From positions 8,359,885 through 8,423,884 of the forward strand of contig NC_068991.1 of the NCBI RefSeq assembly GCF_001194135.2: a stretch of 64,000 nucleotides of DNA, given 5' to 3'. Origin of the DNA: Octopus bimaculoides (taxonomy: Eukaryota). Of this stretch, positions 21,920 through 60,439 are shown piece by piece; the first letter of the stretch is position 1; every line of letters begins with the position of its first letter. Under the pieces are notes generated by a model. That model searched no databases. It was not told where the DNA came from and worked only from the letters and a program-made list of their open reading frames with translations. Position numbers and translations under genes: made by a program.

Positions 21920-22766
21920 CTATAATGAAGAGATTTTACGTAATTAATAATAGGAAATAATTGAGTTACTTAACAATAGAAGAAACTGATAGAATAAGTA
22001 CTAGTCCCTTGTATAAGTCTCTTGGGGTGGGGTCCAATTTGTTCAACTAAAACCTTTCAAGGCAGTGCTCTAACATGGCCACAGTCAAGTGAGTGAAACA
22101 AGTAAAAGAATAGAAGAATTCTTGGTCAAGTGATTGGCAATAAGAAAAGATCCAATTGTAGAAACCACACCAAGAATGGAACATTTGAGTGAGACAATTC
22201 TTTTTTGGAACGTTTCTATGTCTCACGACCATGCAATATCATTCTTCATACACAAGCATCGATCAACAGTTCATTCAGAGAGAAATTACCTCCGTTACCA
22301 GCACAGGCAGGAGCTCACTAAATATTAACACTTTCTTCTTGTTTTGATCACTCATGTATGCATAATTATATATATATATATATATCATCATCGTTTAATG
22401 TCCGCTTTCCATGCTAGCATGAGTTGGATGATTTGACTGGGGACTGGCGAACTAGATGGCTACACCGGACTCCAATCTGATCTGGCACAGTTTCTACAGC
22501 TGGATGCCCTTCCTAACGCCAACCACTCCGAGAGTGTAGTGGGTGCTTTTACGTGCCACCAGCGCGAGGGCCAGTCACACGGTACTGGCAACGGCCACGC
22601 TCAAAATGGTGTTTTTTATGTGCCACCTGCACTGGAGCCAGTCCAGCAGCACTGGCAACGACCTCGCTCAAATGATTTTCTAATGTGCCATCAGCACAAG
22701 TGCTAGAAGGCGACGCCGCTAACGATTATGCTCAAATGGTGCTATTTATGGGCCACTAATACTTAC

Positions 22767-33999: not shown

Positions 34000-34095
34000 A
34001 TGAAGAATGAGAAACATGTTTTATGGTTTATTTTAATTTGCGGTTGGCTTTTATGTTCATTAAAAGCCTCCAAAAGCAAAAAGAAAGAAATTATG
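34000..34095 (+). CDS. Secreted alpha/beta-hydrolase-domain protein, exon 1 (signal peptide)
   Basis: aaaaATG ... ATG|gttagt; MKNEKHVLWFILICGWLLCSLKASKSKKKEIM has a basic n-region, hydrophobic h-region and small-residue cleavage region. Confidence 0.8.
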
Positions 34096-36033
34096 GTTAG
34101 TACTTTACTCGGTAATTTTCAACGAAATCAAATAATATCTATTTCAGTGTTAAACATATTTCAATGATTCAGTGTTGTCTCATTCATCGTGATTTTGGAG
34201 ATGGCGCACCATAGCAGACAGCTAGAAACGACCTTTTATACCATTTATTTCGTTCGGTGCTTCTCACTTTTGAATTACAATTTTCTTAGTTTTAATCTAT
34301 GCATTCTTTCACGCTAGTTTCTTTAAAACAATGTTTCAGAATCCTACTGAATCGCGATAATAAACTGTGTTCCTCTTTTCGTAATCAAACACGGACGCTA
34401 TACCAAAGAAACCTGTCCAATGTTTTCGAAATTTGTTTTTAACTAAAATCATAAAACGAACAGTTCCTTCTATTTTATTTCTTATTTTATACTACAAAAC
34501 ATTTACTCTGATTACCCATTGTTTTTATTATTTGTATTTTTTTTTCTTTTACTATTTTAGTGGGGTCAACCGGTATTTTGGGGGAGTGAAATATTTACCT
34601 AGAATATCTCTAAATTTCTTTATTTATCTATTATATTTGTTCCCATACTGATTTAGATAAATTTTATACTTGATTAATATTTCATATTCGAAGATTTTAT
34701 ACATCTTCAATTCTATTGCAGTTTAACTCCATTCTGGCAAATTTACTTTTTCATGTTCCTAAAGAAAACTTGTAGTTCTTTTCTTTATAGAAAACAACTG
34801 ATTTTGGAGGAAAAGATTTGTATATTTTAAACAAGAACTATATGAAGTTAATCTTTTCACCATGGGAATTGTGTCAACAGTTTTAATCTTCGCAGGTTCT
34901 TCTCGTGTTGAGAATGAAAAGTGAATCAGCTCCTTTCAACAATATAGGCTACGATATACATCGAATGAACGTTGATAGAAAATTATTGCAAACTCTGGAT
35001 TTAACAGTGGAAGCTAAAATTCTTCCATAGGTTTGCATGTTTATTATTGACTACAAAACTGTCCAAATTAATAAGGCACACCGTCTTTCTCGTGTGTGCA
35101 TGAGACTAAATTTGTTTTTTTTAATTAACATATGGCGTTCATACTCAACTTGGTATCTCTGATATATATTGGGGTTTTTGTTTGATTGAGAATGACCGCA
35201 GAGTCCATTTTGCTATGGATTTGGTGTATGGCAGAATGAAACGTCTCTACTTTCTGTTGGTTTCGTCTAGTTCTTCCTGAAAGAATTGATTCAAATGCCT
35301 TTGCGATCGTACGTTTTTTTCAAACTGGAACAAACGTGTCTTAGACAATTGTGTTAAAACTGTATTTAAAATATCTCTTATCGATGGTACTTGTCTGAAA
35401 AGGTAGGGGCGATAGAACTGAAGGCCTTAATGATTGAAGACAGGTTTTTTAAAAGAGATTTATGATTGCTTGGTTTGAGGTTTCTTGAAGGTTTTTTTTC
35501 CCCATTTAATTACATTCCTATTATGTCCCTTTTTCCATTGCCACATCTAGGCTCAATACAGTGTTTATTCATTTTTTATTTCTTAGTCCAATCCACGCCA
35601 GCCTGGAAAACAGATATTAAATGATGATGATAATTCCAAAGAATTATAATACCTAGGTTAAAATAAATAATGCTTTGTTTTAGTTGTTACAAATCATTTG
35701 GGGGTTTGGGGAGTTGTACCTGTCTTGCAAGTGACTTCATCTGAAACAATGTGTTGGAACTGAAGCACCTACATCATGAAAGAGCTATTCTAGCCATTTA
35801 ATAACACACTAAGCTGTTAAATTTAGTTCCTGAAGTGTTAGAATTTTCATTGCACAACTCTGACGTAGTTCCATGAAATTGCAGTTATAAGTCGTAAGAC
35901 AAATTTGTGAGGGCAATGATTTTTTTTTTTTTAATTTTGGTATAAAAAAAAAAGAGGTTTTAGTTATTACAGAATCATGGTTAAGTTTTCATTCTAATCA
36001 GTTTTGTTGATTTTATTTTATTTTTTTTTCCAG

Positions 36034-36150
36034 AAATTATTTGACTTTATTGAAAATGAAAAGAATTCAATTTCAAAACAAAAGGCTAGTTGCTCTCTCA
36101 ACTCACCAAGCTTGAAGTCAGTAGCGCACCTAAGACTCCTGGAACCACAG
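36034..36150 (+). CDS. Secreted hydrolase exon 2
   Basis: ttttttttccag| ... CAG|gtatgt, 117 bp, phase 0-0; KLFDFIENEKNSISKQKASCSLNSPSLKSVAHLRLLEPQ. Confidence 0.82.
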
Positions 36151-36656
36151 GTATGTTTTTTTTGTGTTTTATTTTTGTTAACAAAACTATTAACTGGATT
36201 TATGTCATAGAAATTAAGAAACGTCAAGACATGAAATAAATCATTTTTAACAGGTTAACTTGAAGTAGATAAATAAAAAACAGCATTTAGAATATTGGGT
36301 TAAAAAAAATTCATACACACTATTATTTGTAGTTTAATCTACATCAAGTTACACCATTAAAACGATTTATCAATTGGATTATTTTGAAAGATTAAATGGA
36401 TAGATTGTATTTTGTTTGATTAAAATTTATGAATATGATATTCCATTTTTAAAGAGAAAAAAAAAAGGAAAGAAATATATAGACCGTAGAACTATTTTAT
36501 TTGAATACTGTTTGAATATTGTTTCATATCTCATTCTGTCACATCAATTCTTGTTACATGAATTTGTTTTATATAGTTCTAATCCAGGAATAAAAGCCAA
36601 TACTTTCAGCATTGGTAACATCTAAACTTTTTGTTTCTTTTTGATTATCTCTTCAG

Positions 36657-37891
36657 AATGAAAATACTTTCCTTTGTTATTTAAAGTTCTTGGAAAATAA
36701 TCCTAATGATGGTTTCGTCTGGTCTGCTTTGGGCCATCTTTATTTACAAAAACCACAACCCCAGACCACACAAGCAAACTTTTGTTTTAAACAAGCTGTA
36801 AAACAATCTACTAAAAATAGTCTCTCTGTCAATGAATGGTATTATATCGGTCCTTTTGTCATTGGGAAAATGGAACTGGACGGAGATCCTTTGGCTGCCT
36901 ATGGTGGCATCCGTAATGTTTCATTATATCGTTTGAAAAAAAATATTAAATATTTTTCTGAAATTGTTCCTAATGGGGAAGTCAAATGGAAAGTTTATCG
37001 ACATTTAGGAGAATCCTTGATCCGAATTTCTCCTGAATTAGAATGGAATGATTTGGTTGGATCTCTTGGTTCTATGGGTATCACTGAATGGCAAGGTTGG
37101 ATTATTGGTGAGTTTGCTATCAACGAAAAAGAACAAACAGTTATTATTCAATGCCATGGACTTACTACTGCCTATGTAGATAAAATTCCAATTGTCGGAG
37201 ATGTCTATCATCGAGATCAGCTTATGTTCAGCATTACCCTCACACGCGGAATCCATACACTTTATGCAAAATTACGTGCTAAAGTAAACGCAAATTTTAA
37301 ATGTGTTTTCAAGACAGTTAGTACAAGTTTTGATATACTTTCTCCAACAATGGTACCTGATCTAGTCGATGGTTATTTGTTCAGTCAATATCTAAGTATT
37401 CCTGTGATTAATTTCCTGGGCAACAAATGGTTAAAGAATATTGGAGTTTCTCTCAAGAGTCAATCTTACGGTCAGCCAATTACTTTGGAATTGGTTGATA
37501 AACGGAATATAGCTCCTGGTCAAATTCTTGGACTAATCATTTCCATCACTTCTCCTCATAATCGTCTCACAAATGGCTGTTATTCAACAGGGATCGATTT
37601 GGTTCTGGAAATTTCTACATCAGAAGGTAGCATGGAATCTGCACCAATAAATCTTCGGTGTCGAAAACTTAATCAGTCTTTTCTATTTTCGTTCATTGAT
37701 CATGATGGTTCTGTCCAACAAGGAGCTGCTATCGCACCGATTTCTAAATGTGTCTCAAAGCTTTGCCCGGTCCTTCTCACTCTTCATGGAACTTCTGTAC
37801 CAGCACAAAACCAGGCAGACAGTTACAAAAGAATGGTTGGAAAAGATTTTGAATTTGGATTTGACACAATCTGGCTTTTGGCACCAACAAG
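36657..37891 (+). CDS. Secreted hydrolase exon 3 (TPR-like motif, beta-rich region, start of hydrolase domain)
   Basis: ctcttcag| ... AG|gtaaat, 1235 bp, open frame containing the 401-aa ORF. TPR-like FLCYLKFLENNPNDGFVWSALGHLYL...ANFCFKQAV; oxyanion-type LLTLHG. Confidence 0.92.
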
Positions 37892-38301
37892 GTAAATATA
37901 TTATTTGGATGTAACTCTTCACAAAGGTAAAAAAAACACACTAAGAGCACAATAAAACATATAATAAAGTACAGATCTTATATTGCACTGACAGTTCAAT
38001 ATACCAAGTCAGATGGTATTTCATTATGTGTTGTATTGTACTCTTCTTGTTATGTATTATTATTATTATTATTATTATTATTACTGGAAGGCAGCGAGCT
38101 GGCAGAATCATTAGCACGCTGGACAAAATGCTTAGTGATATTTTGCCCATCGCTTCGTTCTGAGATCAAATTTGGCCGAGGTTGACTTTGCCTTTCATCC
38201 TTTCAGAGTTGATAAATTAAGTACCAGTTGTGTACTGGGGTCGATGTAATGGACTACCCCCTCCCCCAAATTTCAGGCCTTGTGCCTATAGTAGATAGGA
38301 C

Positions 38302-38349
<48 letters not shown>

Positions 38350-39110
38350 CATCATCATTATCATTGTTATTATTATCATTAAGGTGGCGAGTTGGCAGAA
38401 TAAGTACCAGTTGAGTACTGGGGTCAATGTAATCGACTATACCCCTCCCCCAAATTTCAGGCCTTGTACCTATATTAGAAAAGATTATTATTTATCTTCT
38501 CCATGCTCCATATCTCATTTAAAAACAATTAGTAGGGTCTTATTGGTCACTGATTTCATTCAGGCATTTTGAAAAACAAGCTAATTTTTAAATTGCATCT
38601 TTTGGGGACATTTATGTTTGTGCTTTGAAGTGCATTTACCTGTGACTTTTCAAGGTACGTAAGTGCGTGCAAGTGTGGTTATGTGGTTAAGAAGCTTGCT
38701 TCCCAAATGTGTAGGATTGGGTTCAGTCCCACTGTGTGATACCTTGGACAAGTGTCTTCTATTATGGTCCTAGGCCGATCGATGCCTTATGAGTAGATTT
38801 GATTGACAGAAACTGAATGAAGCATATCATGTGTGTGTTTGTGTGTATGTACATGCGGGTTTGTACCCTTATCTATTTGATTTTTGCAAATGAGCATCAT
38901 CATTGTTTATGTGAAAAATGTATCTAGCCATGGACAGTATTATCATACTTGGAAACAAATTAGCGTTGGCAACAGGAAGGGCACCTGGCCGTAGAAAAAT
39001 CTGCCTTACCAACAAATTGTCTGACCAATTCAGGCATGGAACAGCAGACATTAAATGATGTTGATGATGATGATGTATAATTATACTTATCTTTATTTTT
39101 ATTTTCACAG

Positions 39111-39241
39111 GCATGGAGCACACAACTGGGAAGGGCCTGGTGCTCTGACTGCTATGACAGCCCTTGAAAAACTGCGTATCCTTGTCCAGTCAGCAGATTG
39201 GATAGAAAACAAAGTTGCAGCTGACCATGTGATTTTTTCAG
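39111..39241 (+). CDS. Secreted hydrolase exon 4 (ends at a GC donor)
   Basis: ttttcacag|G HGAHNWEGPGALTAMTALEKL...DHVIFS G|gcatgt. Only the GC donor keeps the GHSMG motif. Confidence 0.88.
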
Positions 39242-39522
39242 GCATGTTACAATGTTAAAATAATTTTCTGAATTAAACATGCAATATTTATTTAAAGATT
39301 TGCCAAGAAGTTTTGAGTAAATGTGGCTGTGTATTAAGAATTTTGCTTCCCAACCACATGGTTCCAGGTTCAGTCCCTCTGTGTGGCACCTTGGGCAAGT
39401 GTCTTCTACTATAGCCTTGGGCCGACCAAAACCTTGCAAGTGAATTTGAAAGATGCTGGCCAGATAGGAAGCTCCAATTGTCTGTTTTATTTTCACAGGC
39501 ATGTAGCTCATAACTTGTCACT

Positions 39523-39678
39523 GGCACAGATGCTTTATATGTGGCACCAGCACAGGTACTTTATATGTGACACAAGCACAAGTACTTTATATGTGGCACC
39601 AGCACAGGTATTTATATGTGGCACTGGCACAAGTGCTTTATATGTGGCACTGGTACAGGTGCTCCTTACGTGGCAATG
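39523..39678. repeat. 26-bp minisatellite, about 6 copies
   Basis: Unit gcacaggtactttatatgtggcacca with variants, related to the gtgccac units of the third repeat family. Confidence 0.8.
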
Positions 39679-39848
39679 GTATGGGTGCATTTTACATGAC
39701 ACCTGTGTAGTTCACAATTGAGCAGACCATGTATCTCAGATCAATGACAAATGAATCCGTGTTAAACTAGGATAAATGTAATACGTTTGTTTCTTATTTC
39801 TACTTTCTCATGTTAACAATACTGATAATGCCATTCACTGCTCTTCAG

Positions 39849-39975
39849 GTCATTCAATGGGTGGTCATGGAGCATGGCACCTTGCTACTCACTTTCCTGA
39901 CCGTGCCCTAGCTGTAGTCTCCCTCGCAGGATGGATCAAGAAAGAAGAATACGGGGACAGTAATCTGTTTTTCAG
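39849..39975 (+). CDS. Secreted hydrolase exon 5 (nucleophile elbow)
   Basis: ctcttcag| ... AG|gtttgt; GHSMGGHGAWHLATHFPDRALAVVSLAGW carries G-x-S-x-G; catalytic Ser codon at 39854-39856. Confidence 0.93.
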
Positions 39976-40190
39976 GTTTGTTTCAGAAATTGTTTTTTCA
40001 TCTCTTTCACAGTAAAAACATGGCTGTGTGGTTAAGAAGCCTGCTTTGTAACCACAATACAACACATAATAAAATACCATCTGACATGGTTTATTGAACT
40101 GTCAGTGCAACATAAAATGGGGTTTCTCACAAACCCCATCCGAAATTGTTTGTAGAAAGCCAAAAATGATAGTATTATCTTATATTTCAG

Positions 40191-40290
40191 ACATGATATT
40201 TCAGCAAGCCACACAGATCCATCTGTCAAAGCAATAATGGAAGCTGCTATTGCAGAAAATGATGCTGACAGACATGTTTCAAATCTTAAG
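40191..40290 (+). CDS. Secreted hydrolase exon 6
   Basis: tatttcag| ... AAG|gtaact; HDISASHTDPSVKAIMEAAIAENDADRHVSNLK. Confidence 0.9.
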
Positions 40291-41320
40291 GTAACTGTTC
40301 AATCCACTCCACAATATATTCCACAATTGCTTATTATTTCCACTATGTCTGCATATACAAGTGATAAGTTGATAATGAATTGCAATCTCTGTGAATATTG
40401 TTGGTATTTTGTTATTTTTAGAGTGAGATTTAAGATGGCTATAGAGTTTACCATTTAGTTTACCACAGAATTTTTATGTATGATCTCATATATATCATAG
40501 AAAAATGATATTTTATAATTATTGGGTAAGAAATTTGTTGCACATCCACATGATTTGGGATTCAGTACTTCTGTGTGGTACCTTGTGCAAGCGTCTTTTA
40601 TTATAGCTCTGGGCTGACCAAAGTCTTGTGAATGGATTTGATAAACAGAAACTGAAAGAAGCCTGATATATATATATACATTTTCAAAATGTAACTACAT
40701 GTGGATTGCTTTTTTTCTCCGTTTTCCTTTTCTCTTGGACTTTCCTGATTCCTGTTTCTGAAGAAGAGCTTTGCTTGAAACGTAAAACTACCTATCTTTC
40801 CTTCCCTGAGCATCTGTTAATACTTTGCATGTACTATGTCCTCGCATTGTTGCTTTTTTCTTGTGTTTTTTCTTCATTTTTGGGGGGCTTTATTTATTTA
40901 TGTATGTATATATGTATGTATTTGTGTGTGTAATGTGTGTGTTACTATCTCCTTGCCTTGACTTCAAATGATAGTTGGAAATGAGTGCCATTGTTATGTA
41001 AGTGATGTCTGTTTCTAATCTTACATGAAAGAACTCTATGTTATATATGCATGCAATAAGCTTCTTTCAGTTTCTATGTATCAAATCCACTCACAAGGCT
41101 TCACTCATCTATAGTAGAAGTCCCTCGCCCAAGGTGCCACACACTGGAATTGAACCTGAAACCATGTGGTAAGGAGGCAGATTTCCTAATTTTGATAGAA
41201 ACTGAATATCCTTTATTGTAATTAAACAAAATAATCTCTTTCTTGAAAATGTATTGTTATATTTTTCATTAATTTATTAATTAATTAACTAATTGGCTTG
41301 TTTTGTTTTTCAATCAAAAG

Positions 41321-41469
41321 GGAATTCCAGTGTTAGCAAGAATTGGAGAAAATGATAGAACTGTCCACCCCTATTTCGTAAGGCGGATGTTTCGATTGAT
41401 TTCAGAACTGAAGACAGCCATCAATTATACAGAACTCTCAGGCAAGGAGCATTGGTGGTGGGATACTTG
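41321..41469 (+). CDS. Secreted hydrolase exon 7 (candidate catalytic Asp and His)
   Basis: caaaag| ... TG|gtgagt; GIPVLARIGENDRTVHPYF...ELSGKEHWWWDTW. GxxDxxV and GxxH motifs are typical of S9-like/esterase hydrolases. Confidence 0.92.
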
Positions 41470-41998
41470 GTGAGTCAAGAAGGGAAATCAAAGAAAAACA
41501 CTGGTTTTTTTTCTCTATTATTGTTTTTTTTCTTTACTCTTCTTTCAACCCTTTCCCTTCCTAACATCAAATCACACACAAACATTCTATCAATTTTACA
41601 TTCAAACTGGCCATATTTGGTCTCTCGTGCCTAACAATGGTATCGTTGAACTCTTGAAGCTACAAAATAGTGCATGCTTAATTCAAAATAATATGAATAA
41701 ATGAGCATTATATTTGACAGAGTAATGTGAATGCTAAAGGGTTTTAAATGTTTAGGTTTTGGCTTATATTCCATCTCCTGTAAGATAAAAATCTCGTTCT
41801 TCCTGTTCTTTTAGATGTTATGATGTTTGGTGCTATTTACATGTCACTGGCACAGTATTTTTAAAACGATATTGTAGGGTAGGTGTAAGAGGCCAGATCT
41901 GTCTGGTCTGATTTTAAAATAAGTGGAATATTTTGGTCAGATATGGCCAGTTTAAATGCTAAAGGGTTAATCATGCCGTTTTCTTCAACATTTTGCAG

Positions 41999-42269
41999 GT
42001 CTGTCAATGACGGAGGTGCTGTGCATGACCAACAGTTGAGGTCATTTGCACAGAAACACGGTGGCATCTCAGAGTTCAGTAAAAGCTCAGGAAGCTGTAG
42101 TGTTGACAAAGAGCATTGCTCTAGTGGTAATCAGTATTCAATCACTGCTTCTCAACGTCCAGTCGATGGCCATCATACTCTGGTGACACTTAACCCTGCT
42201 TTCGGAGAATCTATCCATGGTATTTGTGTCCTGCAACAAATTACACCTTTCCGAACAACCACCATAGAT
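41999..42269 (+). CDS. Secreted hydrolase exon 8
   Basis: ttttgcag| ... GAT|gtaagt, 271 bp, frame continuous. Confidence 0.88.
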
Positions 42270-43449
42270 GTAAGTAAACAAATATATTAACTCCTTTAAG
42301 TCTGTAAAGTAAATATCATTGTCATCATCATCATCATCGTCGTCGTTATCGTCATCATCTGCCCAGGCAACTTACCTGAACAAATGCAACTCTCCCATGC
42401 CAGGTATCCTAATTGAGCAATACACCATAAGCATCTCGCTTGCGTTTTAGTCATATTGGTCTTTTTCTAACTGAAATATCTCATCTGTGCACAGATGATG
42501 ATAGTGGTTAGCTAACTGAACTGATTCATCTTGCCCATTGATCATTTGGTGTCTGTTCACCTGCTCAGCATCTAATGATATTTACCATTAATTCAATAAA
42601 TTCATTTGCTGAAGTAGTTCACATCATCCATCATGCTGCAGTCACCTGACTTCAATGAACCCTGACTCGGGTGGCTCACATGTTAATTAACTCAAAACTA
42701 GTACCCTGACAGATGCTACTACTCTGGGTCAGGGTAGATCCGGGAATAATAGTTAATAAGATGTGGTTCCACACTCCTCAAAAACCTAGAGCTCTTATAC
42801 TAGGGCCCCATTATTGGATGCAGTTTAAAGTCATATCCAGGGCATAGAATATATTGCCTCCATTAATTTTCAGGCTCAGCACAATTTTCGATTTTTAATC
42901 AACATTGTGGTGATTAAATTTTTGCATACTAGTGTACAGACACCAAATTAATTTGTTAAAATTGGTTGCAATTAACATCCCTTAGTAAAAAGCACTCAGT
43001 CCACTCTGTGGGGTGTTTGGTGTTAGGAAGGGCATCCAGCCATAAAGACCATGCCAAAACAGACACAATAACCTGGTGTAGTCTTCTACCTGGCTGGCTC
43101 CTGTCAAACCGTCCAACCCATGCCAGCATAGAAGACAGACGTTAAATGATGACGATGACGATGAAGTTATATGAAATATGTAGAATTCTGAAAAATATCC
43201 CACTATCAAAAATGAGTTAATCCTTTTCAAGCCAACCTACTTGTGACTACCCTTGGTTCTGTGATACAAACTTCTTGTTTTACACGGATCTAAATTAAAA
43301 CCTTCCTTTGAAATTTCATGTTAATTTCTTTTTAATAACCACCAGTTTAATAATGACTTATTTCACAAAAAAAAAAATTTTTTTTCTAAATGCTACAGTT
43401 TTTCACATTCTAACTTGAATTCAATCAATATTTCTTTGTCATTGGAAAG

Positions 43450-43557
43450 ATCCATCAAACTGGCGACTCTATTCAACTGCAAACATCAAATGTTGCTAAA
43501 TTCCAGCTTGTAAAAAGTTCAAACCGAGCAATAAACTGGACATCGGTTAATGTTGTT
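43450..43557 (+). CDS. Secreted hydrolase exon 9
   Basis: tttctttgtcattggaaag| ... GTT|gtaagt; IHQTGDSIQLQTSNVAKFQLVK... The upstream tacag acceptor would read into an in-frame TAA. Confidence 0.75.
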
Positions 43558-44094
43558 GTAAGTATGGTTATGATACTTTACTGTCTGAAATATAATAAGT
43601 TCTTATATATCATCATCATCATCATCATCATCATCGTCGTCGTTGTCATGGTTTAATGTCCGCTTTCCATGCTGGCATGGGTTGAACAATTTGACTGAGG
43701 ACTGCTGAGCCAGGAGGCTGCACCAGGCTCCAATCTGATCTGGCAGTGTTTCTACAGCTGGATGCCCTTCCTAATGCCAACCCTTTGTCTGTCCTTGTTT
43801 GTCCCCTCTATGTTTAGCCCCTTGTGGGCAATAAAGAAATAAGAACTGAGGCCTTGTCAAGCCTTCCTCCACAACTCATCTTCTGTTTTCTTCACTTAAG
43901 TACTGGGGTTGATTTGTTCAACTAAACCTGTCAATACAGTGCCCTGGCATAGCTGTAGTCCAATAACTAAAGCATGTAAAAAGGAAAATAAAAGACCTGT
44001 ATAAACTGCTTTAAGGTCTCACTTTATAATATAATTTCTGACTGGATTTCATTTTTCTATGTTACTGTTTATGTTTTGTTTATTTTTGTTTTAG

Positions 44095-44179
44095 GTTGAT
44101 ACTGACTTCACTGTTCCTCCAACCTCAGTGCACACTATGATGAACACACCTGATAAAGAACACCTGTGCAGATCTGAAG
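44095..44179 (+). CDS. Secreted hydrolase exon 10
   Basis: gttttag| ... G|gttaat; VDTDFTVPPTSVHTMMNTPDKEHLCRSE. Confidence 0.78.
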
Positions 44180-44186
44180 GTTAATT

Positions 44187-44218
<32 letters not shown>

Positions 44219-44221
<3 letters not shown>

Positions 44222-44603
44222 TGATATCTCACAGTACAAGTTTAATTCATTCCGTGACTGAACTCGTCTTATGATTTACTTGTTTTACAAATCAATTTTC
44301 CCCATTGAAGTTAACTAAAATGTAATTAATCTGTTCCAGCCCCCCAAAACCACTCGAAAATAATTTTTTATGGGTTTTAAAACAGAAAAGTTGTAGTTAC
44401 AAGTAAAATGACAATTATAAAAAAGAGAATGTAAAAGAAATATGTAAATTGGTTTTATTAATTGAATTACCTTAAAGATGGGACGACTTGTGTTCTCATA
44501 CTGTGGATTTCTGCTTGTACTTCATGACAAAAATTCGCACGAGTCTCGGCTCGTACAGTTGATTACTCGTACAATGGTGCACTCGTACTGTAAGGTTCTA
44601 CTG
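44219..44603. mobile_element. Tigger/pogo-type MITE inserted in a (TA)n tract
   Basis: TA-flanked; TIRs CAGTGATATCTCACAGTACAAGT vs reverse complement of the right end CAGTAGAACCTTACAGTACGAGT (17/23). Confidence 0.75.
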
Positions 44604-44997
44604 TATATGTATTTGCACACACACACATTTAGAGTGGACTGACTGAAATAAAAAGGAGTTCCCCACACCATGATAGAAATTAGTATTTTATTTTGGCTGA
44701 GTCTGTCTTTTGTTTGTTTGAATTTCACCTGTAGATGCACAGAATCATCAGGCTAGTTGTGACTGAAGATCCTGTAAATATACAGGTGAAACTCAGAGAC
44801 TGGCTTAACCCAAATAACATGAGGGGCTGTGTGGTAAGTAGCTTCCTTATCAACCACATGGTTCCGGGTTCAGTCCCACTGCATGGCACCATGAGCAAGT
44901 GCCTTCTACTATAGCCTAGGGCCGACCAAAAAAAAAAAAAAATCAAAGTTTATTATTATTATTATTATTATTGTTATTTATATTGTTGTCATTGAAG

Positions 44998-45099
44998 GTG
45001 AATGGTCTATATGTACCGAAAACAAGGAAACTAGCCGAGACTATCGTAACTATGGGCCTGCAAGACGTGTAGCTGAAAAACCCTTCTTGATAGTAACTG
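44998..45099 (+). CDS. Secreted hydrolase exon 11
   Basis: attgaag| ... G|gtatgt; GEWSICTENKETSRDYRNYGPARRVAEKPFLIVTG. Confidence 0.85.
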
Positions 45100-46661
45100 G
45101 TATGTCTTAGATTTTCTTACTTTCATATCAATGTAGTTTTTATTTTCAGTTTTTGCAAGTTCTTCCTTGGTCTTGTCAGTAATGGATGCTCAATCACAAT
45201 GATGGATGCTATCTCTAGCGGTCAAGCATCCATCATTGACAAGACCAATGAAGGTTGGAGTCATGTGATCATGTGATCTCGGTGCTGGAGATGGTGGGGA
45301 TTTATCTCTCCGTTAGCAATACAAACAAGAGTGTGTTTTGCACCATACTTGAATCTGTTCTGATATTACCATACATCACATTTCTGTTGGGCATATTATT
45401 ACTGTATCACATTTATCACATATCTATATATATATATATCTTATTTTTGTTTAGTATTGTGAGTCTTCCAACTATACTGTCTATCTTAAATTGCCATGCT
45501 TTATCATATTTCTGAAGCACACTTCATCATCACCATCATTTAAGATCCATTACCCATGCTGGCATGGGCTGGACGGTTTGACCAGGGCTGGTAAGCTGAG
45601 GGGCTGCACCAGACTCCAGTCCATTTTGGCATGGTTTCTACGGCTGGATGCCCTTCCTGTCACCAACCACTCCAAGTGTGTAATGGGTCCTTTTACGTGC
45701 CAATGGCATGGGTGCCAGTTGCGTGACACCAGTATCTGCCATGACTACAATTTCACTTGGCTTGATAGGTCTTCTTCTCAAGCACAGCATATTGCCAAAG
45801 GTCTCACTTATTTGTCATGGTCACCATGAGGCTCAACATTTGACAGGTGCATTTCATGTACCACTGGCATGGGTGCCAGTTGCCTTTGTGAAGCCCGACG
45901 CTTGAAGGTGCTTTTTACATGCCACCAGCACAAGTGCCATTTACTTGGGACCGGCATAATTGTCTGTTAGGAAGAAATATGTTCTTGTTGTTAACAGATA
46001 CAAATTCTCATCTTGGTGTTACCATTATCTTCCCAGTTCTATAGTATCAATAATCTATCTCCTCAATAAACAGATAAACATTTTATTATTGAGGTGATTT
46101 TTGGTTTTATATAACTTATTTAAATCATTAACTCTTTTGATGTAAGCCCACCTAAAACCATCCATGATTCACCATCATCATTTAACGTCCATTTTCCATG
46201 CTGGCATGGGTGAGACGGTTTGACTGGAACTGGTAAGCTGGAGAGCTGCACCAGGTTCCAGTCTGATTTGGCATGGTTTCTGCGACTGGACACCCTTCCT
46301 AATGCCAACCACTCCAAGTGTGTAATAGGTGGTTTTTATGTGCCTTCAGTGTGGGTGTCATTTACATGACACCGACAACGGTCATGACTACAATTTCACA
46401 GGTGCCAAATGCAAATTCTTGTTTTAAAGTAACCTAAATTAAACTTTCTATCAAAATTTCATATTAATTTATGTTCCAAACACCATCAAAATTCTTCATT
46501 ATTTCCAAAATTAATTGAAACAAAAGCATTGCATGTGAACAGAAATATGGTCATGAAAGGGTTTAGTCTGTTTTTATTCCTGATTTAAAAATTTAAAAGC
46601 GATTAATAAAAAAAAACAACCTATTTCAGACATGTTTCAATTTAGTATGTTTTAATTTCAG

Positions 46662-46793
46662 GTACTTTAGGTTCTGTAGTTACTAACCAAATACTTCTAC
46701 AACTTGCTGTATATATTTCCAACCACTTCTGGCTTTCATCAGATACTTCAGCAGCCATTGTTAAAGATACTGAAGTACCGCTAGAAAAACTAA
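46662..46793 (+). CDS. Secreted hydrolase exon 12
   Basis: aatttcag| ... A|gtaagt; TLGSVVTNQILLQLAVYISNHFWLSSDTSAAIVKDTEV. Confidence 0.87.
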
Positions 46794-46905
46794 GTAAGTT
46801 AAGCTGTTTCAATCCTAATCAAAATATGTTATCTTTCTCCTACTTTAAAGAAATTGTATATATTATGAGTAATCTTATCTTATTAATGATATATATTCAT
46901 TTCAG

Positions 46906-46992
46906 AGAAAAGAAACCTCATAATCATAGGTGGCCCTAAAGAAAACAGCTTAACATCTGAATTTCTTAAAAAAATACCTATAAACATTGAAG
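46906..46992 (+). CDS. Secreted hydrolase exon 13
   Basis: catttcag| ... G|gtaatg; KRNLIIIGGPKENSLTSEFLKKIPINIE. Confidence 0.87.
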
Positions 46993-47421
46993 GTAATGAT
47001 ATTTCATATTTTTTTCTTGCATCACCAGTTGTAGAGTATGAAACTCTTAATCTTGGGGTTGTGGGTTTGAGCCCCATGTTGAGCAAATACTTTGTAACCG
47101 TTTAGCATTTAAACAGGCCATTTCAGGCCCAAATATTCCACTTATTTTGTGTTGAAACCAACCGGATCCAGGTTCTCGGGATTCTTCTTGGTGATGTTCT
47201 AATTACATTTCTGTGATATTGGAGCTGTGATCACTCAATGCAGAGAAATAGCAGCTTGACCTGGAGAGACTCCCTCCTCCACAGATGGCCTTACCTTTGC
47301 AGGAACCCCATTTCAACTTCTTGTATTCATGATTGTATTCATTTGGTCATTACCATAATTTTAAAAGAACATGCAAATGTATACTGCTGCTATTTCCACC
47401 TTGTTATCTCTTATTCTACAG

Positions 47422-47597
47422 ATAATAAAATTATTTTGGAGAAATGCAGATTCAAGTCTTTGCGATCAGGAATCTTGTCTTTGGTACCAAATGGAGGAGA
47501 CAACTTGGCGTTGTTATTGATGGGTCAGTCTTTTGAAGGATTACTTGATATTGTTTCTCTGGCAACGCCTACTATACCACCAATGTGTAGGTCTCCC
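47422..47597 (+). CDS. Secreted hydrolase exon 14
   Basis: attctacag| ... CCC|gtaagt; DNKIILEKCRFKSLRSGILSLVPNGGDNLALLLMGQSFEGLLDIVSLATPTIPPMCRSP. Confidence 0.87.
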
Positions 47598-48912
47598 GTA
47601 AGTCTGTTGTTTTATTCTTCATCCCAATAACATTATTGCAAATACCTCTTTACTGTCTTTTTATTTATTTCCAATCTAATTCCTGCTAGTGCCAACCATC
47701 ACTGGTTTACCAGTTCTAGTGAGTGTTCTTGATGTCATAGTCTTATTTGATATTATTGAAGTGTGTGTGTGTGTGTGTGTGTGTAAGGGAGCTCTTTAAT
47801 CCTAGTGGACAATCATTCTAGTACTGGTGACACATTAAAATGTATTGTTAGCAAACAATTACCAACTTTCTGAAGCCAGGATTTGAAATCGAAACCACAG
47901 TTTCAAGCTAGTTATTGGCTAATTGTTCTCATTTTTTTTGCACTAAGAGATTAGCATGACAAAACAGTGGGCAATATTTTTTCTATTGTGTGTATATCAG
48001 ACAACAAAGAATCGTGACAATAGGAGTTGCTGCTTTTGAACAGGCCTGTCCATCCCATACCTATATAGACAAGCAAATATATAAAACAATATGCGTTCAT
48101 GCTTCTATTACTGGTATTGCTCTGGGACTGATTACCAAAAATTTGTTCTGTTTATTTTATCTGTTCTCTATTCAGCTGCCAAATATGGCCTTCCAGCAGC
48201 AACCCTATCCAGCTAGGGATTGACCACTCTCCAGCGGCTTCACATAGCTGTCTGACTTGAGCCTAAAGCCGTGTTCAAAAATGTGGAGATTGAAATCTGG
48301 CAAGCAAATGCAGTAAGAATGTCTGCTGTGTCCTTTCCTGCTAAATTTGACATACATTATTGTCAAATTTAGCCTGGACACCCTGTAAAAAGAAAGAAAA
48401 ATTTTTAAATGTTTATTATGATACATCATCATCATCATCTCTCCACTTTCCTTGCTGGCATAGGTTGGACGGTTTGACAGAAACTGGCTAAGCAAGACTG
48501 TACCAGGCTTCTGTGTCTGTTTTGACATAGTTTTTACGACTGGATGCCATTCCTAACACCAACCATTCTGCAGGGTGGTCTGAGTACTTTACACATCACA
48601 AATGAAGTCAGTTTAGACCTGGTTTTTACAGCTGGATACCCTTCCAAATGCCAACCACTTTACAGTGTCAACTGGATGTTTTTACCATTGCACCAGCACT
48701 GGCAGGGTCACCAAGTAACTTGCAAGACAAAGAGCCTTTGAGAGGGAAGGGGGAATTGGCAGAAGTGACTTTGTGCATGTTTTTTTTTTAAATGTCTCCT
48801 TAAAAATTATTTGAGATAAGTTTCTTTTTTTTTTCATAATTTATTTTTGTAAGTATTCTTTCTTATTTTCTTAATTTTTCCTTTCTTCCTTCTGTTTTTC
48901 TTATCTTTCTGT

Positions 48913-48922
48913 NNNNNNNNNN
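48913..48922. other. Assembly gap (other gaps: 5760-5969, 7439-7689, 14455-14801, 16283-16355, 61433-61650)
   Basis: Runs of N; several sit inside or next to microsatellites or homopolymer runs. Confidence 0.99.
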
Positions 48923-48982
48923 TTTTGGGGCAATGGATGGGAATTTAGGGCAGACATATCTTCATGTTCATGTCATGCATAG
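48923..48982 (+). CDS. Secreted hydrolase terminal exon, 5' part lost in assembly gap
   Basis: Immediately after the 10-N gap: FWGNGWEFRADISSCSCHA* (TAG 48980-48982). No acceptor is visible. Confidence 0.7.
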   Translation, partial: FWGNGWEFRADISSCSCHA

Positions 48983-49225
48983 GAAATAATGGCTTTCACA
49001 TCTTCCTTTCAACACATCTCAGAATTATGTTGAAGATTATGAAATTAAATTTTTCTTTTTTTTTTCATAATTTATTTTTGTAAGTATTCTTTCTTATTTT
49101 CTTAATTTTTCCTTTCTTCCTTCTGTTTTTCTTATCTTTCTGTATTGACATTTATTTCCTTTCTTGAATTATATTACATTGAAGAAGAAAAAAAAACCCT
49201 ACTGTTTCAGTCTACCAATTTCCTA

Positions 49226-49256: not shown

Positions 49257-50564
49257 CATATACACACACATACACATTTATATATATACACATATATATA
49301 TGTATGTATATGTTACATACATATATATGAACACACACACACATGGCCACAGCAAGATGGCTGAAATCTGTAAAACAGTACAAAAAAATTTTCTTTTATA
49401 TTTTTACATTCAGTGGATGGGAGGACCGAACAGATGTTAAGACGAAGCTGTGAAATGAAATATTCATGATAACAGAATTCCATTCCTTGTTCAAAATTAT
49501 TATTTTTATGTAATTATTCAATTGTTTCCTGATATATTCCATTATTTCAACTTTAAGATATTAAAGCCAACTGTTTTCATTGGATTATCATAGATTATCT
49601 TCACCATTTTCATGCTGCTGAGTTTTTGGCAGAATTGTTAGCACACCAGACAACTGGCTTAGCAGCGTTCCTTCCAGCTTTACGTTTTTTTGTGTTCAAA
49701 TTCTGCTGAGGTCAACTTTGCCTCTCATCCTTTTGGGGGTTGATAAAATAAGTACCAGTTGAGCACTGGGGTCAATGTAATTGACCAGACCCATTTCCCC
49801 AAAATTTCAGGCCTTGTGCCTATTGTAGAAATAATTATTTTCACCATTTACTGCTGGTTCAACTTGTTCAATGAGTTATTTTTCAAAGCATGTTTGTAAG
49901 TTTTCGTTAACGTATTCTCTTTATTCCTATCATCCTGGTTTACTATTTCTCTTAAGGTACTTTTGGGGATACACAACAGTCAGGAGGATTAAAGTTGTAA
50001 GTTACTGTCTGGCTAAGAATGTCATGAATTTAAAATCTCACTTGCTATAACCAGTATATAGTATCGTCATTGTCATCGTCATCATCATCATCATCATCAT
50101 CATCATCTAATATCTGTCTTCCATGCTGGAATGAGTTGGAAGTTTTGGTGGGAGCAGGCAAGCCAGAGGGCTGCACCAAGCTCCACTGTCTGTTTTGGTA
50201 TGGTTTCCACAGCTGAATGCCCTTCCTAATGCCAACCATGTTACAGAGGGCACCAAGTGCTTTTTACGTGGCACCAGCACCAGCAAGGTGTCTGCTTTGG
50301 TATGGTTTTTACAGCCGGATGCCCTTCCAAACACCAACCACTTTACAGTGTGGACCAGATGTGTCCTCAGATAAAATCAAGTACTCTGCTTACCTCAGTC
50401 TGCTCAAATCAGAACAGGTACAACACTCAGTTTAGTTGACTGAATGGCTGGTTGGAGGAAAAGTATCCATTGAAAAGGAAATTCTTCCACAATTCATATG
50501 TAAATGACTAAATTTGCAAAGCAATCCTCTCCATAACAATGTAAAAATACATGTACCACCATAG

Positions 50565-59183: not shown

Positions 59184-60439
59184 ATTATTATTATTATTAT
59201 TATATTAATCTTATGCTATAGTGGGACCTTCTCATAAAGTTACTCTGGAAGATGGAAACAATAAGCAATGGCCAGAATAAATAGCATGGAAGCTTTTTAT
59301 GAACACACTCAAAAAACATTTTACACAAAGGATATATATATATATATATTAATAATCTAGAGAAGAACCACCATTGTGCAACTCACACGATGAAGGAGAT
59401 CAGACACCATCAAGAAAAGCGTACTATACAAAATACTAGTTTTAAAATCTGAAAAACCCAGGGGAAAATTTGTAATACATAAAATCTAAAAAATATTGGA
59501 CTAAAATATTTTTCATTATACAACTCAATTTGATATTAGTAAATTGTATTTCCTTGTAAGTTCGGATTTCATAATTCCCTAACATTATAATATATATATA
59601 TATATATATCCACACCCACCCACATATGTGCAGATATTATTCTAAATAGTTAAATTTTGTTTCTTAAAAATTGAAAAGACCTCTGGGGTTTGTTTGTTTG
59701 TTTTTTTTTAACTTTTTTCTGCAAATTCTATATTTAGAGCTATCACTTTTGAGGACATTCATCACATTGTAATACCAAGGAGAATGTGTAAAATAAAAAT
59801 ATAAACAATACTCTTTATTTGCCGTTATAAAAATTTTATGTTGTTCTTATTGTTATTCAAGTTTTCAACTCTCACTTCTTTCTTCCTCTGTCATTTAATA
59901 TGACTACAATCATTGTCAAAATGTACTTCTAAGTAAGATTGTTGAAATAAAACATGGAATTATTTATATATTGTTTGTTCACTAGTTATTATTAAATGTT
60001 TTTCTTCCTTTGTTTTTTGTGGAAAATCAGTCATCACCATCTACTGGTGTTTCTCCTATACTGGCATAGGTTGAGTCGATATGAACTGGTGTGCCAGGGA
60101 TCTACACCGAGTCCTAATGCCTGCTTTAGCATGGTTCCTACAGCTGGATGCCCTTCCTAATGCCATCCACTTCACAGTGTGTACTGGGTGTTTGTGGCCC
60201 TAGCACTTGAGGGTTCACCAAGTAACTCACAAGACAAGACTCACACAACTGAGTGGGGTATAGTATTGAGGGACATGAAAATTTGACAGAGGGGTCAGTT
60301 TTGAGAGTCCTAAAAGCAGCAAGATGGGAGAGAGAAGCTCAAGTTGCCCTTGATATATCTACATATGGAAAAGAAAAGCAAAAAATAGACAACCTACTTC
60401 TACCAACATTTCCCTATGCTAGAAAGACACAGAAGAGTA

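What the first reader, a model, noticed from the sequence alone, without database searches (positions are those of the whole stretch)
34000..48982. Uncharacterised ~1,000-aa secreted TPR + beta-domain + serine hydrolase
Seen: 14 exons give 972 uninterrupted codons, plus a clipped last exon. Architecture: signal peptide; TPR-like helix pair; W/Y/G-rich beta region (NEWYYIGPF...YFSEIVPNGEVKW); hydrolase core with LHG, GHSMG (Ser529), GENDRTV (Asp614) and GKEHWWW (His646); C-terminal NLIIIGGP.EN and FWGNGW region. Known: S-D-H order and GxSxG define alpha/beta hydrolases (S9/esterase-like). From memory, this layout resembles fungal secreted proteins of the ARB_06907 type and bacterial S9-like proteins, and I know no vertebrate counterpart; both points are unverified. 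Inference: an active extracellular esterase/peptidase of unknown substrate (digestive, salivary/venom, mucus or microbial-polymer degradation), possibly with a patchy distribution or ancient transfer.
Basis: partly seen in the sequence, partly recalled or inferred. Interest (0 to 1): 0.75.

Follow-up and report, generated by a model that had tools for sequence, protein, structure and literature searches.

The report
Uncharacterised multi-domain octopus serine esterase gene
This is an intact octopus gene for a large signal-peptide-bearing serine hydrolase whose family runs from bacteria to invertebrates, is not seen in vertebrates, insects or nematodes, and has no tested function; it is an ordinary vertically inherited gene.

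Summary
A 15th exon is cut by the gap.

The gap is not continuous. About 27 codons and the splice acceptor are missing. The 92 bases left of the gap are repeated exactly just after the stop codon.

The gene is from Octopus bimaculoides. Its product is 89% identical to an Argonauta protein that NCBI names 'uncharacterized secreted protein ARB_06907-like'. Orthologues occur in molluscs, annelids, nemerteans, brachiopods, priapulids, echinoderms, hemichordates, amphioxus, Hydra, amoebae, a fungus and many protists. About 820-aa relatives occur in Bacteroidota, Planctomycetota and Verrucomicrobiota.

Predicted architecture:
- signal peptide
- helical repeats
- a jelly-roll plus Ig-like domain pair, like the N-terminus of GH2 glycosidases
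- a small alpha/beta-hydrolase closest to the esterases LC-Est1 and TmEstA
- a beta-sandwich
- an unclassified alpha/beta domain

It fails the tests for S9 peptidase membership.

Best reading: a secretory-pathway carboxylesterase, possibly acting on glycans. No substrate was tested. There is no sign of recent gene transfer. Interest is moderate to low.

The parts
34000..34095 (+). Exon 1: start codon and signal peptide (aa 1-32, MKNEKHVLWFILICGWLLCSLKASKSKKKEIM)
   Evidence: This is the first ATG of its open segment, and the donor is gttagt. Residues 7-21 are the only strongly hydrophobic 15-residue stretch in the protein. The 'A|KKKE' junction aligns with the N-termini of the Gigantopelta and Ylistrum orthologues. 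The cleavage site is inferred; no SignalP was available.
36034..36150 (+). Exon 2 (aa 33-71): the first helices of the N-terminal helical-repeat region
   Evidence: tblastn with Argonauta P0001. The AF2 model of the orthologue has helices at 3-15 and 28-37.
36657..37891 (+). Exon 3, 1235 nt (aa 72-483). It encodes TPR-like helices (to about 36806), a jelly-roll beta-sandwich (about 36834-37337), an Ig-like beta-sandwich (about 37389-37733) and the start of the hydrolase, including the LHG oxyanion motif (37782-37790).
   Evidence: The AF2 model of this exon's own translation has pLDDT 93.3 and pTM 0.87. Its best Foldseek matches are the N-terminal domain pair of GH2 glycosidases (6qud 2.3e-5, TMq 0.26-0.28). 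Pfam TPR_17 is below threshold at 21.0 bits. About 400-aa ORFs from many animal assemblies stop being similar just after 'LLAPTR', where this exon ends.
39111..39241 (+). Exon 4 (aa 483-527): the nearly invariant RHGAHNWEGPG motif and a hydrolase helix. Its donor is GC-AG.
   Evidence: Only the GC donor (cag|gcatgt) gives ...VIFSG|HSMGG as in the orthologues.
39849..39975 (+). Exon 5 (aa 527-569): the nucleophile elbow GHSMGGHGAW, with Ser529 encoded at 39854-39856
   Evidence: G527, H528, S529, M530 and G531 are invariant in 45 sequences. The motif aligns with the GHSMGG of LC-Est1C, PDB 3wyd. In the AF2 model the serine follows strand 486-497 and precedes helix 499-510.
40191..40290 (+). Exon 6 (aa 569-602): a helical insertion (cap) between hydrolase strands 6 and 7
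   Evidence: The model has helices at 548-556 and 563-570.
41321..41469 (+). Exon 7 (aa 603-652): Asp614 (41354-41356) in GENDRTV and His646 (41450-41452) in GKEHWWWD
   Evidence: D614 and H646 are conserved in at least 90% of sequences. They align with the Asp and His stretches of LC-Est1C. In the model they lie just after strands 575-580 and 605-610.
41999..42269 (+). Exon 8 (aa 652-742): the conserved NDGGAV motif, a variable Ser/Cys-rich linker, and the start of the second beta-sandwich
   Evidence: The linker is the only long low-confidence segment of the model (residues 647-671, pLDDT below 50).
43450..45099 (+). Exons 9-11 (43450-43557, 44095-44179, 44998-45099; aa 743-841): the beta-sandwich domain and the start of the C-terminal alpha/beta domain (YGPARRVAEKPF)
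   Evidence: The model has strands from 676 to 781. No Pfam family matches this region.
46662..47597 (+). Exons 12-14 (46662-46793, 46906-46992, 47422-47597; aa 841-972): the C-terminal three-layer alpha/beta domain with the NLIIIGGPKEN and LATPTIPPM motifs
   Evidence: The only Pfam hit is S_layer_C, below threshold (21.9 against 23.9 bits). A profile search of PDB sequences gives no significant match.
48913..48922 (.). Assembly gap that hides the acceptor and about 27 codons of exon 15
   Evidence: Argonauta residues 941-967 have no counterpart in the window. The left flank 48821-48912 is duplicated exactly at 49052-49143.
48923..48982 (+). The readable end of exon 15: FWGNGWEFRADISSCSCHA plus the stop codon
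   Evidence: It is 79% identical to the C-terminus of Argonauta P0001 and 78% identical to that of Ylistrum P0003. The frame is taken from the orthologues, not from continuity across the gap.

Best explanation
The region holds an intact, vertically inherited 15-exon gene of Octopus bimaculoides. It encodes a protein of about 1,018 aa that enters the secretory pathway.

The protein is a single compact multi-domain serine hydrolase. Its parts, in order, are:
- a cleavable signal peptide
- about five TPR-like helices
- a jelly-roll beta-sandwich and an Ig-like beta-sandwich, arranged like the N-terminus of GH2 glycosidases
- a small alpha/beta-hydrolase catalytic domain of about 215 aa
- a variable Ser/Cys-rich linker
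- a second beta-sandwich
- a three-layer alpha/beta domain with no classified relatives

Proposed catalysis follows the classical mechanism. His646, oriented by Asp614, activates Ser529 in the GHSMG elbow. The oxyanion is stabilised by the backbone after the LHG motif and by Met530. An acyl-enzyme forms and is then hydrolysed.

The most likely reaction is carboxyl-ester hydrolysis of a short acyl group. The most likely substrate is a glycan or glycoconjugate, with the non-catalytic domains holding it.

Shown here: the gene model, the conserved triad, the fold, and the distribution of the family. Inferred: signal-peptide cleavage, esterase rather than peptidase chemistry, a glycan substrate, and the final location. 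Animal proteins have no retention signal and so are probably secreted or post-ER. Many protist relatives carry -EL tails.

The confidence of 0.55 is for the esterase reading. The gene and its catalytic competence are at about 0.9 or above, and a glycan substrate is at about 0.35.
For: Gene:
- 972 stop-free codons across 14 exons with consensus splice sites.
- 89% identity to the Argonauta orthologue and 50-59% identity to those of other molluscs.

Catalytic competence:
- G527-G531 are invariant, and D614 and H646 are conserved in at least 90% of 45 sequences from animals to protists.
- The same motifs are present in the bacterial relatives.
- All three residues align with the corresponding stretches of LC-Est1C.
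- In a confident AF2 model of the orthologue (pLDDT 89.8, pTM 0.91) they lie after strands 5, 7 and 8, the canonical positions.

Esterase rather than peptidase:
- The best solved relative by sequence is the carboxylesterase LC-Est1C (E = 9e-15). Next come cutinases and polyesterases, TmEstA and esterase D. No S9 peptidase is among the 60 best sequence hits.
- LC-Est1 and TmEstA fall in the ESTHER family Abhydrolase_5, in Block X next to the CE1 / PHB-depolymerase group (PMC12103068).
- The best-fitting structural superpositions are esterase D (TMt 0.54-0.56, rmsd 6.2-6.6). The S9 peptidases superpose with rmsd 13-19.

Glycan link:
- The jelly-roll plus Ig pair resembles the N-terminus of GH2 enzymes.
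- 12 of 45 bacterial loci have GH20, GH29, GH92 or a sulfatase within 5 kb. In Sediminibacterium, Flammeovirgaceae, Cellulophaga and Pontibacter the neighbour is directly adjacent on the same strand.

Secretory route:
- The only hydrophobic segment is N-terminal. There are 20 cysteines and 4 N-glycosylation sequons.
- Eleven protist homologues end in KDEL-type tails.
Against: - No member of the family has a tested activity, and every name in the databases is generic.
- Across all 45 bacterial loci the gene context is not conserved. No family occurs in more than 3 of 105 other neighbours. Sulfatases and GH20 genes are common in these phyla, so the association could be partly chance.
- The GH2-like match is modest (TMq 0.26-0.28), and no sugar-binding residues were identified.
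- Jelly-roll domains also accompany peptidases of the S15 family (my own knowledge).
- Foldseek ranks the catalytic domains of S9 peptidases first by E-value.
- The C-terminal 27 residues are missing from the window.
Confidence: 0.55

Rival explanations
1. It is a serine peptidase, such as an S9-like oligopeptidase or exopeptidase, or an enzyme that trims glycopeptides. The beta domains would restrict access to the active site.
For: UniProt and PGAP name relatives 'Peptidase S9 prolyl oligopeptidase catalytic domain-containing' or 'prolyl oligopeptidase family serine peptidase'. Foldseek's lowest E-values are for the catalytic domains of S9 carboxypeptidases, aminopeptidases and DPP4. Bacterial relatives pass the PF00326 cut-off (32 bits).
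Against: The window protein scores 17.8 bits against the PF00326 cut-off of 22.6. No beta-propeller is present; the N-terminus is a jelly-roll plus an Ig-like domain. The S9 superpositions have rmsd 13-19 and TMq at most 0.21. Sequence profiles prefer carboxylesterases.
Confidence: 0.2
2. It is a hydrolase of polyesters or lipids, such as a polyhydroxyalkanoate depolymerase, a cutinase-like enzyme or a lipase. It would act on microbial storage polyesters or on lipid esters.
For: The best NCBIfam hit is the catalytic domain of extracellular short-chain-length PHA depolymerase (8.7e-6, residues 441-633). Many cutinases, PET hydrolases and lipases match around the nucleophile at E of about 1e-4.
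Against: The NCBIfam score of 25 bits is far below the cut-off of 150. The cutinase matches cover only 40-60 residues around GHSMGG. The family is kept in carnivores and in ER-retained protist forms, and the bacterial neighbours are glycosidases, not genes of PHA or lipid metabolism.
Confidence: 0.12
3. It is a cephalopod-specific digestive, salivary or venom enzyme, or a gene recently acquired from bacteria or fungi.
For: The protein has a signal peptide. The family is absent from the vertebrate, insect and nematode hits, so its distribution looks patchy.
Against: Orthologues at 45-59% identity occur across Lophotrochozoa, Priapulus, the invertebrate deuterostomes and Hydra. In the tree animals form one clade apart from bacteria. 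The gene has 14 introns, and the end of its large exon appears to be shared with other animals. Bacterial relatives are only 21-25% identical. Tissue expression was not testable.
Confidence: 0.03
4. It is a pseudogene or an assembly artefact. The last exon is broken and the locus does not make the full protein.
For: The gap interrupts exon 15. 27 codons and the acceptor are missing, and a 92-base exact duplicate flanks the last exon.
Against: All 972 upstream codons are open, with good splice sites and conserved catalytic and structural residues. The post-gap frame matches the C-termini of the orthologues up to the stop codon. The defect coincides with an assembly gap, which is the simpler explanation.
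Confidence: 0.03

Closest known systems
'Uncharacterized secreted protein ARB_06907(-like)' orthologues (the NCBI and UniProt name for this family in Argonauta hians, Gigantopelta, Pecten, Mizuhopecten, Lingula, Patiria and Durusdinium)
   Same: These proteins are colinear with the window protein over their full length. Argonauta is 89% identical and other molluscs are 50-59% identical. They share the motifs and the length of about 985-1000 aa.
   Different: Nothing of substance differs; this is the same gene family. The Argonauta model starts at the residue that corresponds to Met32 and lacks the signal-peptide exon. I could not retrieve the fungal namesake protein, so I did not compare it directly.
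LC-Est1 (catalytic domain LC-Est1C, PDB 3WYD), a carboxylesterase from a compost metagenome, ESTHER family Abhydrolase_5
   Same: It is the best solved relative by sequence (E = 9e-15). The HG oxyanion motif, GHSMGG, and the Asp and His stretches all align. From memory, the full-length enzyme also has a long N-terminal extension.
   Different: The solved chain has 228 aa. The window protein has about 430 residues before its catalytic domain and about 370 after it. LC-Est1 is bacterial, and its natural substrate is unknown ('Undefined' in PMC12103068).
Thermotoga maritima EstA (PDB 3DOH), an esterase with an N-terminal Ig-like domain
   Same: An Ig-like beta-sandwich directly precedes a small alpha/beta-hydrolase. 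It matches both by sequence profile (6.8e-5) and by structure (TMt 0.39-0.41).
   Different: It has no jelly-roll, no helical repeats and no C-terminal domains, and is 375 residues long.
Esterase D / S-formylglutathione hydrolase and Pfam PF00756 'Putative esterase'
   Same: It shares the GHSMGGHGA nucleophile motif. It gives the best-fitting structural superposition of the catalytic domain (3fcx and 4b6g, TMt 0.54-0.56).
   Different: From my own knowledge, these are cytosolic single-domain thioesterases. The window protein scores 21.9 bits against the cut-off of 22.0 and 16 bits against TIGR02821, whose cut-off is 282.
Peptidase family S9 (prolyl oligopeptidase, DPP4, acylaminoacyl peptidase)
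   Same: It has the alpha/beta-hydrolase fold with Ser-Asp-His in the same order, and it gives the top Foldseek E-values.
   Different: The window protein has no beta-propeller. Its Pfam score is below the cut-off. The superpositions are poor (rmsd 13-19).
The N-terminal domain pair of glycoside hydrolase family 2 (for example Bifidobacterium BbgIII 6QUD, and CsxA 2VZO)
   Same: A jelly-roll 'sugar-binding' domain is followed by an Ig-like domain, ahead of the catalytic domain.
   Different: This is a structural resemblance only (9-11% identity, TMq 0.26-0.28). There is no Pfam GH2 hit. The catalytic domain here is an alpha/beta-hydrolase, not a TIM barrel.

Membership tests
ARB_06907-like protein family (orthogroup) | Full-length colinear homology to proteins carrying that name | tested here: met
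   Argonauta 'ARB_06907-like' gives E = 0 and 89% identity, with all 15 exons covered. Five other proteins with this name are among the top 40 hits.
ARB_06907-like protein family (orthogroup) | Direct similarity to the Trichophyton benhamiae protein ARB_06907 itself | not tested
   That sequence was not among the listed hits, and no paper mentions it. The link rests on NCBI's naming.
Alpha/beta-hydrolase fold serine hydrolases | A GxSxG nucleophile elbow, with the triad in the order Ser-Asp-His | tested here: met
   GHSMG with Ser529, then Asp614 and His646. These are invariant or conserved in at least 90% of sequences.
Alpha/beta-hydrolase fold serine hydrolases | Ser after strand 5, Asp after strand 7 and His after strand 8 of the central sheet | tested here: met
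   DSSP of the AF2 model of the orthologue shows strand 486-497, then Ser498, then a helix. It shows strand 575-580 followed by Asp583, and strand 605-610 followed by His615.
Alpha/beta-hydrolase fold serine hydrolases | Triad side chains within hydrogen-bonding distance of each other | not testable with these tools
   Model coordinates are not exposed to scripts.
Peptidase S9 (prolyl oligopeptidase family) | Pfam PF00326 at or above its gathering score | tested here: not met
   17.8 bits against a cut-off of 22.6.
Peptidase S9 (prolyl oligopeptidase family) | An N-terminal beta-propeller that gates the active site | tested here: not met
   The N-terminal region is helices plus a jelly-roll plus an Ig-like sandwich. 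The whole-chain superpositions on S9 enzymes have rmsd 13-19.
Esterase D / PF00756 putative esterase | Pfam PF00756 at or above its gathering score | tested here: inconclusive
   21.9 bits against 22.0 for the window protein. The bacterial relatives pass at 31-32 bits.
TPR repeat proteins | A Pfam TPR model at or above its gathering score | tested here: not met
   TPR_17 scores 21.0 against 24.4. Five helices are predicted, so the region is TPR-like at most.
GH2-type sugar-binding jelly-roll plus Ig domain pair | Structural match to the GH2 N-terminal domains | tested here: inconclusive
   Foldseek gives E = 2.3e-5 to 1e-3, probability 0.9-1.0, but TMq of only 0.26-0.28. Pfam finds nothing.
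Carbohydrate esterases | Deacylation of a glycan substrate | not testable with these tools
   The evidence is indirect only: the domain resemblance and the bacterial neighbours.
Secreted or secretory-pathway proteins | An N-terminal signal peptide and no other membrane segment | tested here: met
   A hydropathy scan finds only residues 5-24 strongly hydrophobic. The orthologues' N-termini align. No dedicated predictor was available.

The most novel reading that the evidence does not exclude
The family would be an unrecognised class of glycan or glycoprotein de-O-acylases of the secretory pathway. It would be built from a GH2-like substrate-binding module, an Abhydrolase_5-type esterase and a new C-terminal domain. 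It would be shared by bacterial glycan-degradation loci and most eukaryotic lineages, retained in the ER in many protists, and lost in vertebrates, insects, nematodes and yeasts. Those losses would explain why it has never been studied.
Probability: 0.2. Interest if true: 0.6.

Novelty: new member of a known kind. Interest (0 to 1): 0.35.

Why it matters
The gene itself is ordinary. It is one more orthologue of a protein family that annotation pipelines already predict.

The family is a large 'known unknown'. It has more than 1,200 clusters at 50% identity with E below 1e-30. It has a conserved catalytic triad and two domain regions that match no Pfam model or solved structure by sequence. No member has been characterised.

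Its absence from the hits for vertebrates, insects and nematodes plausibly explains the neglect.

If the glycan-esterase reading were confirmed, it would add an enzyme class relevant to bacterial glycan foraging and to glycoconjugate processing in invertebrates and protists.

Tried and rejected
I modelled the Argonauta orthologue and, separately, the window's own exon 3.
- The whole-chain Foldseek search returned only matches to the hydrolase domain. No solved structure shares the overall architecture.
- The C-terminal 310 aa gave nothing on their own. The PDB profile search returned only noise (sortase B, E = 0.04). Pfam returned only a sub-threshold S_layer_C hit on the NLIIIGGP strand.
- Literature searches for ARB_06907 and for the family name found nothing useful.
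- I looked for a conserved bacterial operon. 105 neighbour proteins hit 169 Pfam families, and none occurred more than 3 times. Only a partial association with GH20, GH29 and sulfatases emerged.
- I considered and rejected S9 peptidase membership, a recent horizontal transfer, and a second copy in the window. tblastn finds only this locus.
- Two full-length 'metagenome' homologues that might have been bacterial have eukaryote-type neighbours in one case (PRA1 and an IQ protein beside P0103). The neighbours of the other, P0100, were uninformative.

Full report
**1. The observation**

The finding describes a multi-exon gene on the + strand between 34000 and 48982.

I translated all + strand open segments. 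I aligned two orthologues to the window with tblastn, inspected each junction and joined the exons. Fourteen exons give 2916 nt, or 972 codons, with no stop. The exon coordinates are in the parts list.

Every acceptor is AG. Thirteen donors are GT. The donor of exon 4 is GC (cag|gcatgt), and only this donor gives ...VIFSG|HSMGG as in all the orthologues.

**2. The gap (48913-48922)**

After the gap the sequence reads FWGNGWEFRADISSCSCHA-stop. This matches the last 19 residues of the Argonauta orthologue at 79% identity and those of Ylistrum at 78%.

The orthologues have 27 further residues between ...CRSP, the end of exon 14, and FWGN. Neither these codons nor an acceptor site are found anywhere in the window.

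The 92 bases immediately left of the gap (48821-48912) are 100% identical to 49052-49143, which begins 70 bases beyond the stop codon.

So the two sides of the gap are not continuous. The nominal 10 N stand for at least 81 coding bases plus the end of the intron, and the join is probably a local misassembly. The reading frame of the last 19 codons is taken from the orthologues, not from the window.

**3. Identity and distribution**

The upstream ORF at 3645-4640 on the minus strand is 100% identical to an Octopus bimaculoides protein. That identifies the source species.

The best hit for the gene's product is Argonauta hians 'uncharacterized secreted protein ARB_06907-like', at 89% identity. 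Then follow proteins of 45-59% identity from:
- gastropods and bivalves
- nemerteans
- an annelid
- Lingula
- Saccoglossus
- amphioxus
- sea cucumbers and a starfish
- Hydra

Proteins of 33-42% identity come from Physarum, dinoflagellates and unnamed protists. Cluster look-ups add Priapulus, a dictyostelid (Tieghemostelium), a blastocladiomycete fungus (Paraphysoderma) and a chrysophyte.

No vertebrate, insect or nematode name appears among the 120 best hits. That list reaches down to 35% identity, so orthologues in those groups would have been listed.

An exhaustive profile search finds 1,261 clusters (at 50% identity) with E of 1e-30 or less, and 3,184 with E of 1e-10 or less.

About 60 hits of roughly 400 aa from unannotated assemblies are translations of the large exon alone. 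Their similarity ends just after 'LLAPTR', where exon 3 ends. The end of this exon therefore seems to be shared by many animals.

**4. Bacterial relatives and phylogeny**

A scan of one genome per prokaryotic species found 45 loci. They are mainly in Planctomycetota, Verrucomicrobiota, Bacteroidota and Armatimonadota. The encoded proteins, mostly 790-900 aa, have signal-peptide-like N-termini. They match residues from about 190 to the end at 21-25% identity.

They therefore share the whole architecture from the jelly-roll to the C-terminal domain, but not the helical N-terminus.

In a neighbour-joining tree, eukaryotes and bacteria form separate groups. Animals form one clade, and the window sequence pairs with Argonauta among the molluscs.

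This pattern fits vertical inheritance in animals with several losses. It gives no support to a transfer into cephalopods. The tree has no support values and is a rough test only.

**5. Architecture**

Pfam and NCBIfam detect only generic alpha/beta-hydrolase signals around residues 440-650:
- Abhydrolase_1 is above its cut-off.
- Esterase PF00756 scores 21.9 against 22.0.
- Peptidase_S9 scores 17.8 against 22.6.
- There is a sub-threshold TPR hit and a sub-threshold S_layer_C hit.

I therefore modelled the Argonauta orthologue with a 44-sequence alignment. The result has pLDDT 89.8 and pTM 0.91. The only disordered stretch is the Ser/Cys-rich linker at 647-671. I also modelled the window's own exon 3, which gave pLDDT 93.3.

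The models show, in order:
- five N-terminal helices
- a jelly-roll sandwich
- an Ig-like sandwich
- a compact alpha/beta-hydrolase with a two-helix insertion
- a second beta-sandwich
- a three-layer alpha/beta domain

Foldseek matches the exon-3 model best to the N-terminal jelly-roll plus Ig pair of GH2 glycosidases: BbgIII at 2.3e-5, then CsxA and several beta-galactosidases, mannanases and glucuronidases. TMq is only 0.26-0.28.

For the whole chain, Foldseek matches only the hydrolase domain. The C-terminal 310 aa have no significant relative among PDB sequences.

**6. The catalytic domain**

A profile of the family finds the carboxylesterase LC-Est1C (PDB 3WYD) at 9e-15. The HG motif, GHSMGG, and the Asp and His stretches are all aligned. 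Weaker matches follow to cutinases and polyester hydrolases, to T. maritima EstA (3DOH) and to esterase D.

In the ESTHER scheme, as summarised in PMC12103068, LC-Est1 and TmEstA form family Abhydrolase_5. That family sits in Block X next to the CE1 / PHB-depolymerase group, and its activity is listed as 'Undefined'.

In the model the three catalytic residues sit after strands 5, 7 and 8, the canonical positions. Ser and its neighbours are invariant, and Asp and His are conserved in at least 90% of 45 sequences.

S9 peptidases top the Foldseek list by E-value, but with rmsd 13-19. Esterase D fits best (TMt 0.54-0.56).

**7. Clues to location and substrate**

The only strongly hydrophobic stretch is N-terminal. 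The orthologues share the '...A|KKK(E/D)' junction.

There are 20 cysteines, several of them invariant across the family, and 4 N-glycosylation sequons.

Animal proteins end right after a conserved C-x-C. By contrast, 11 protist homologues, including three dinoflagellates, carry an extra 15-30 residues ending in KDEL, KIEL, SEEL, RTEL, RSEL and the like. Far fewer than one such tail would be expected by chance. This suggests ER retention in those lineages.

In bacteria the neighbourhood is not conserved overall. Even so, 12 of 45 loci have GH20 hexosaminidase (5 loci), GH29 fucosidase (3), GH92 mannosidase (1) or sulfatase (5) within 5 kb. The clearest examples are:
- Cellulophaga: GH20 - sulfatase - GH92 - homologue - sulfatase - GH20
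- Pontibacter: SusD ... homologue - GH29 - GH29 - CBM9
- Sediminibacterium: DUF4838 / homologue - GH20
- Flammeovirgaceae: homologue - GH29 - GH29

These enzymes attack glycans that contain GlcNAc, fucose, mannose and sulfate. An esterase there would plausibly remove acyl decorations.

This evidence is suggestive, not conclusive. Such genes are abundant in these phyla, and I had no background rate to compare against.

**8. Conclusion**

The interpretation needs four corrections:
- It is not an S9-type peptidase by any membership test. It is closest to small carboxylesterases.
- The 'beta region' is a GH2-like domain pair.
- An extracellular digestive role is only one possibility.
- Nothing indicates gene transfer into animals.

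The gene is a normal member of a widespread family that is annotated but functionally unknown.

My best mechanistic reading is a secretory-pathway serine carboxylesterase, possibly a glycan de-O-acylase. I put esterase chemistry at about 0.55 and a glycan substrate at about 0.35.

Interest is moderate to low for this locus. It is higher for the family as a whole.

Noticed in passing
window 48821-48912 and 49052-49143: A 92-base stretch is repeated exactly on either side of the gap and the last-exon remnant. The sequences immediately upstream of the two copies differ. This is probably a misjoin or a collapsed duplication at the scaffold gap.
   Followed up: partly
window 3645-4640 (- strand): A 332-aa Asn/Ser-rich ORF is 100% identical to an Octopus bimaculoides protein named 'bromodomain and WD repeat-containing DDB_G0285837' (435 aa). 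It has no Pfam domain and no other homologue in the 5.8-billion-protein search, so it looks lineage-restricted and its name looks doubtful. It identifies the source species.
   Followed up: partly
window 48600-48730; also 60125-60237, 50201-50351, 18574-18636 (-), 13240-13315, 43748-43786, 22490-22527, 29077-29112, 46274-46313: A dispersed repeat, possibly a SINE, has at least 10 copies at 78-92% identity in the introns and flanks. It creates the recurrent spurious ORFs of the type '...CWHGLDGLT...LDALPNANH...'.
   Followed up: partly
window 39241/39242 (donor of exon 4): The intron is GC-AG (cag|gcatgt). It is the only non-GT donor in the gene.
   Followed up: yes
window 38302-38381 and 39519-39695 (intron 3 and intron 4): There is a (TAT)n microsatellite of about 27 copies, and a 26-bp minisatellite of about 5.6 copies (51-bp super-period).
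   Followed up: no
window 5760-5969, 7439-7689, 14455-14801, 16283-16355, 61433-61650: There are five further assembly gaps. Several are flanked by (TA/TATG)-type simple repeats.
   Followed up: no
homologues P0096, P0099, P0104, P0106, P0113, P0117, P0118, P0120, P0124, P0150, P0240: These protist members of the family carry C-terminal extensions ending in KDEL-like -EL motifs. None of 24 animal members does. This points to ER retention in some lineages.
   Followed up: partly
P0001 (Argonauta hians RefSeq protein) against window 34000-34095: The Argonauta model starts at the residue equivalent to Met32, the last codon of exon 1. It lacks the signal peptide, so it is probably an N-terminally truncated annotation.
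   Followed up: no
L013 2337-9350, L034 4719-9937, L025 84-11023, L020 5-11468: In these loci the bacterial homologues sit directly beside GH20, GH29, GH92, sulfatase, DUF4838, CBM9 and SusD genes on the same strand. These are candidate glycan-utilisation loci in which the esterase could be tested.
   Followed up: partly
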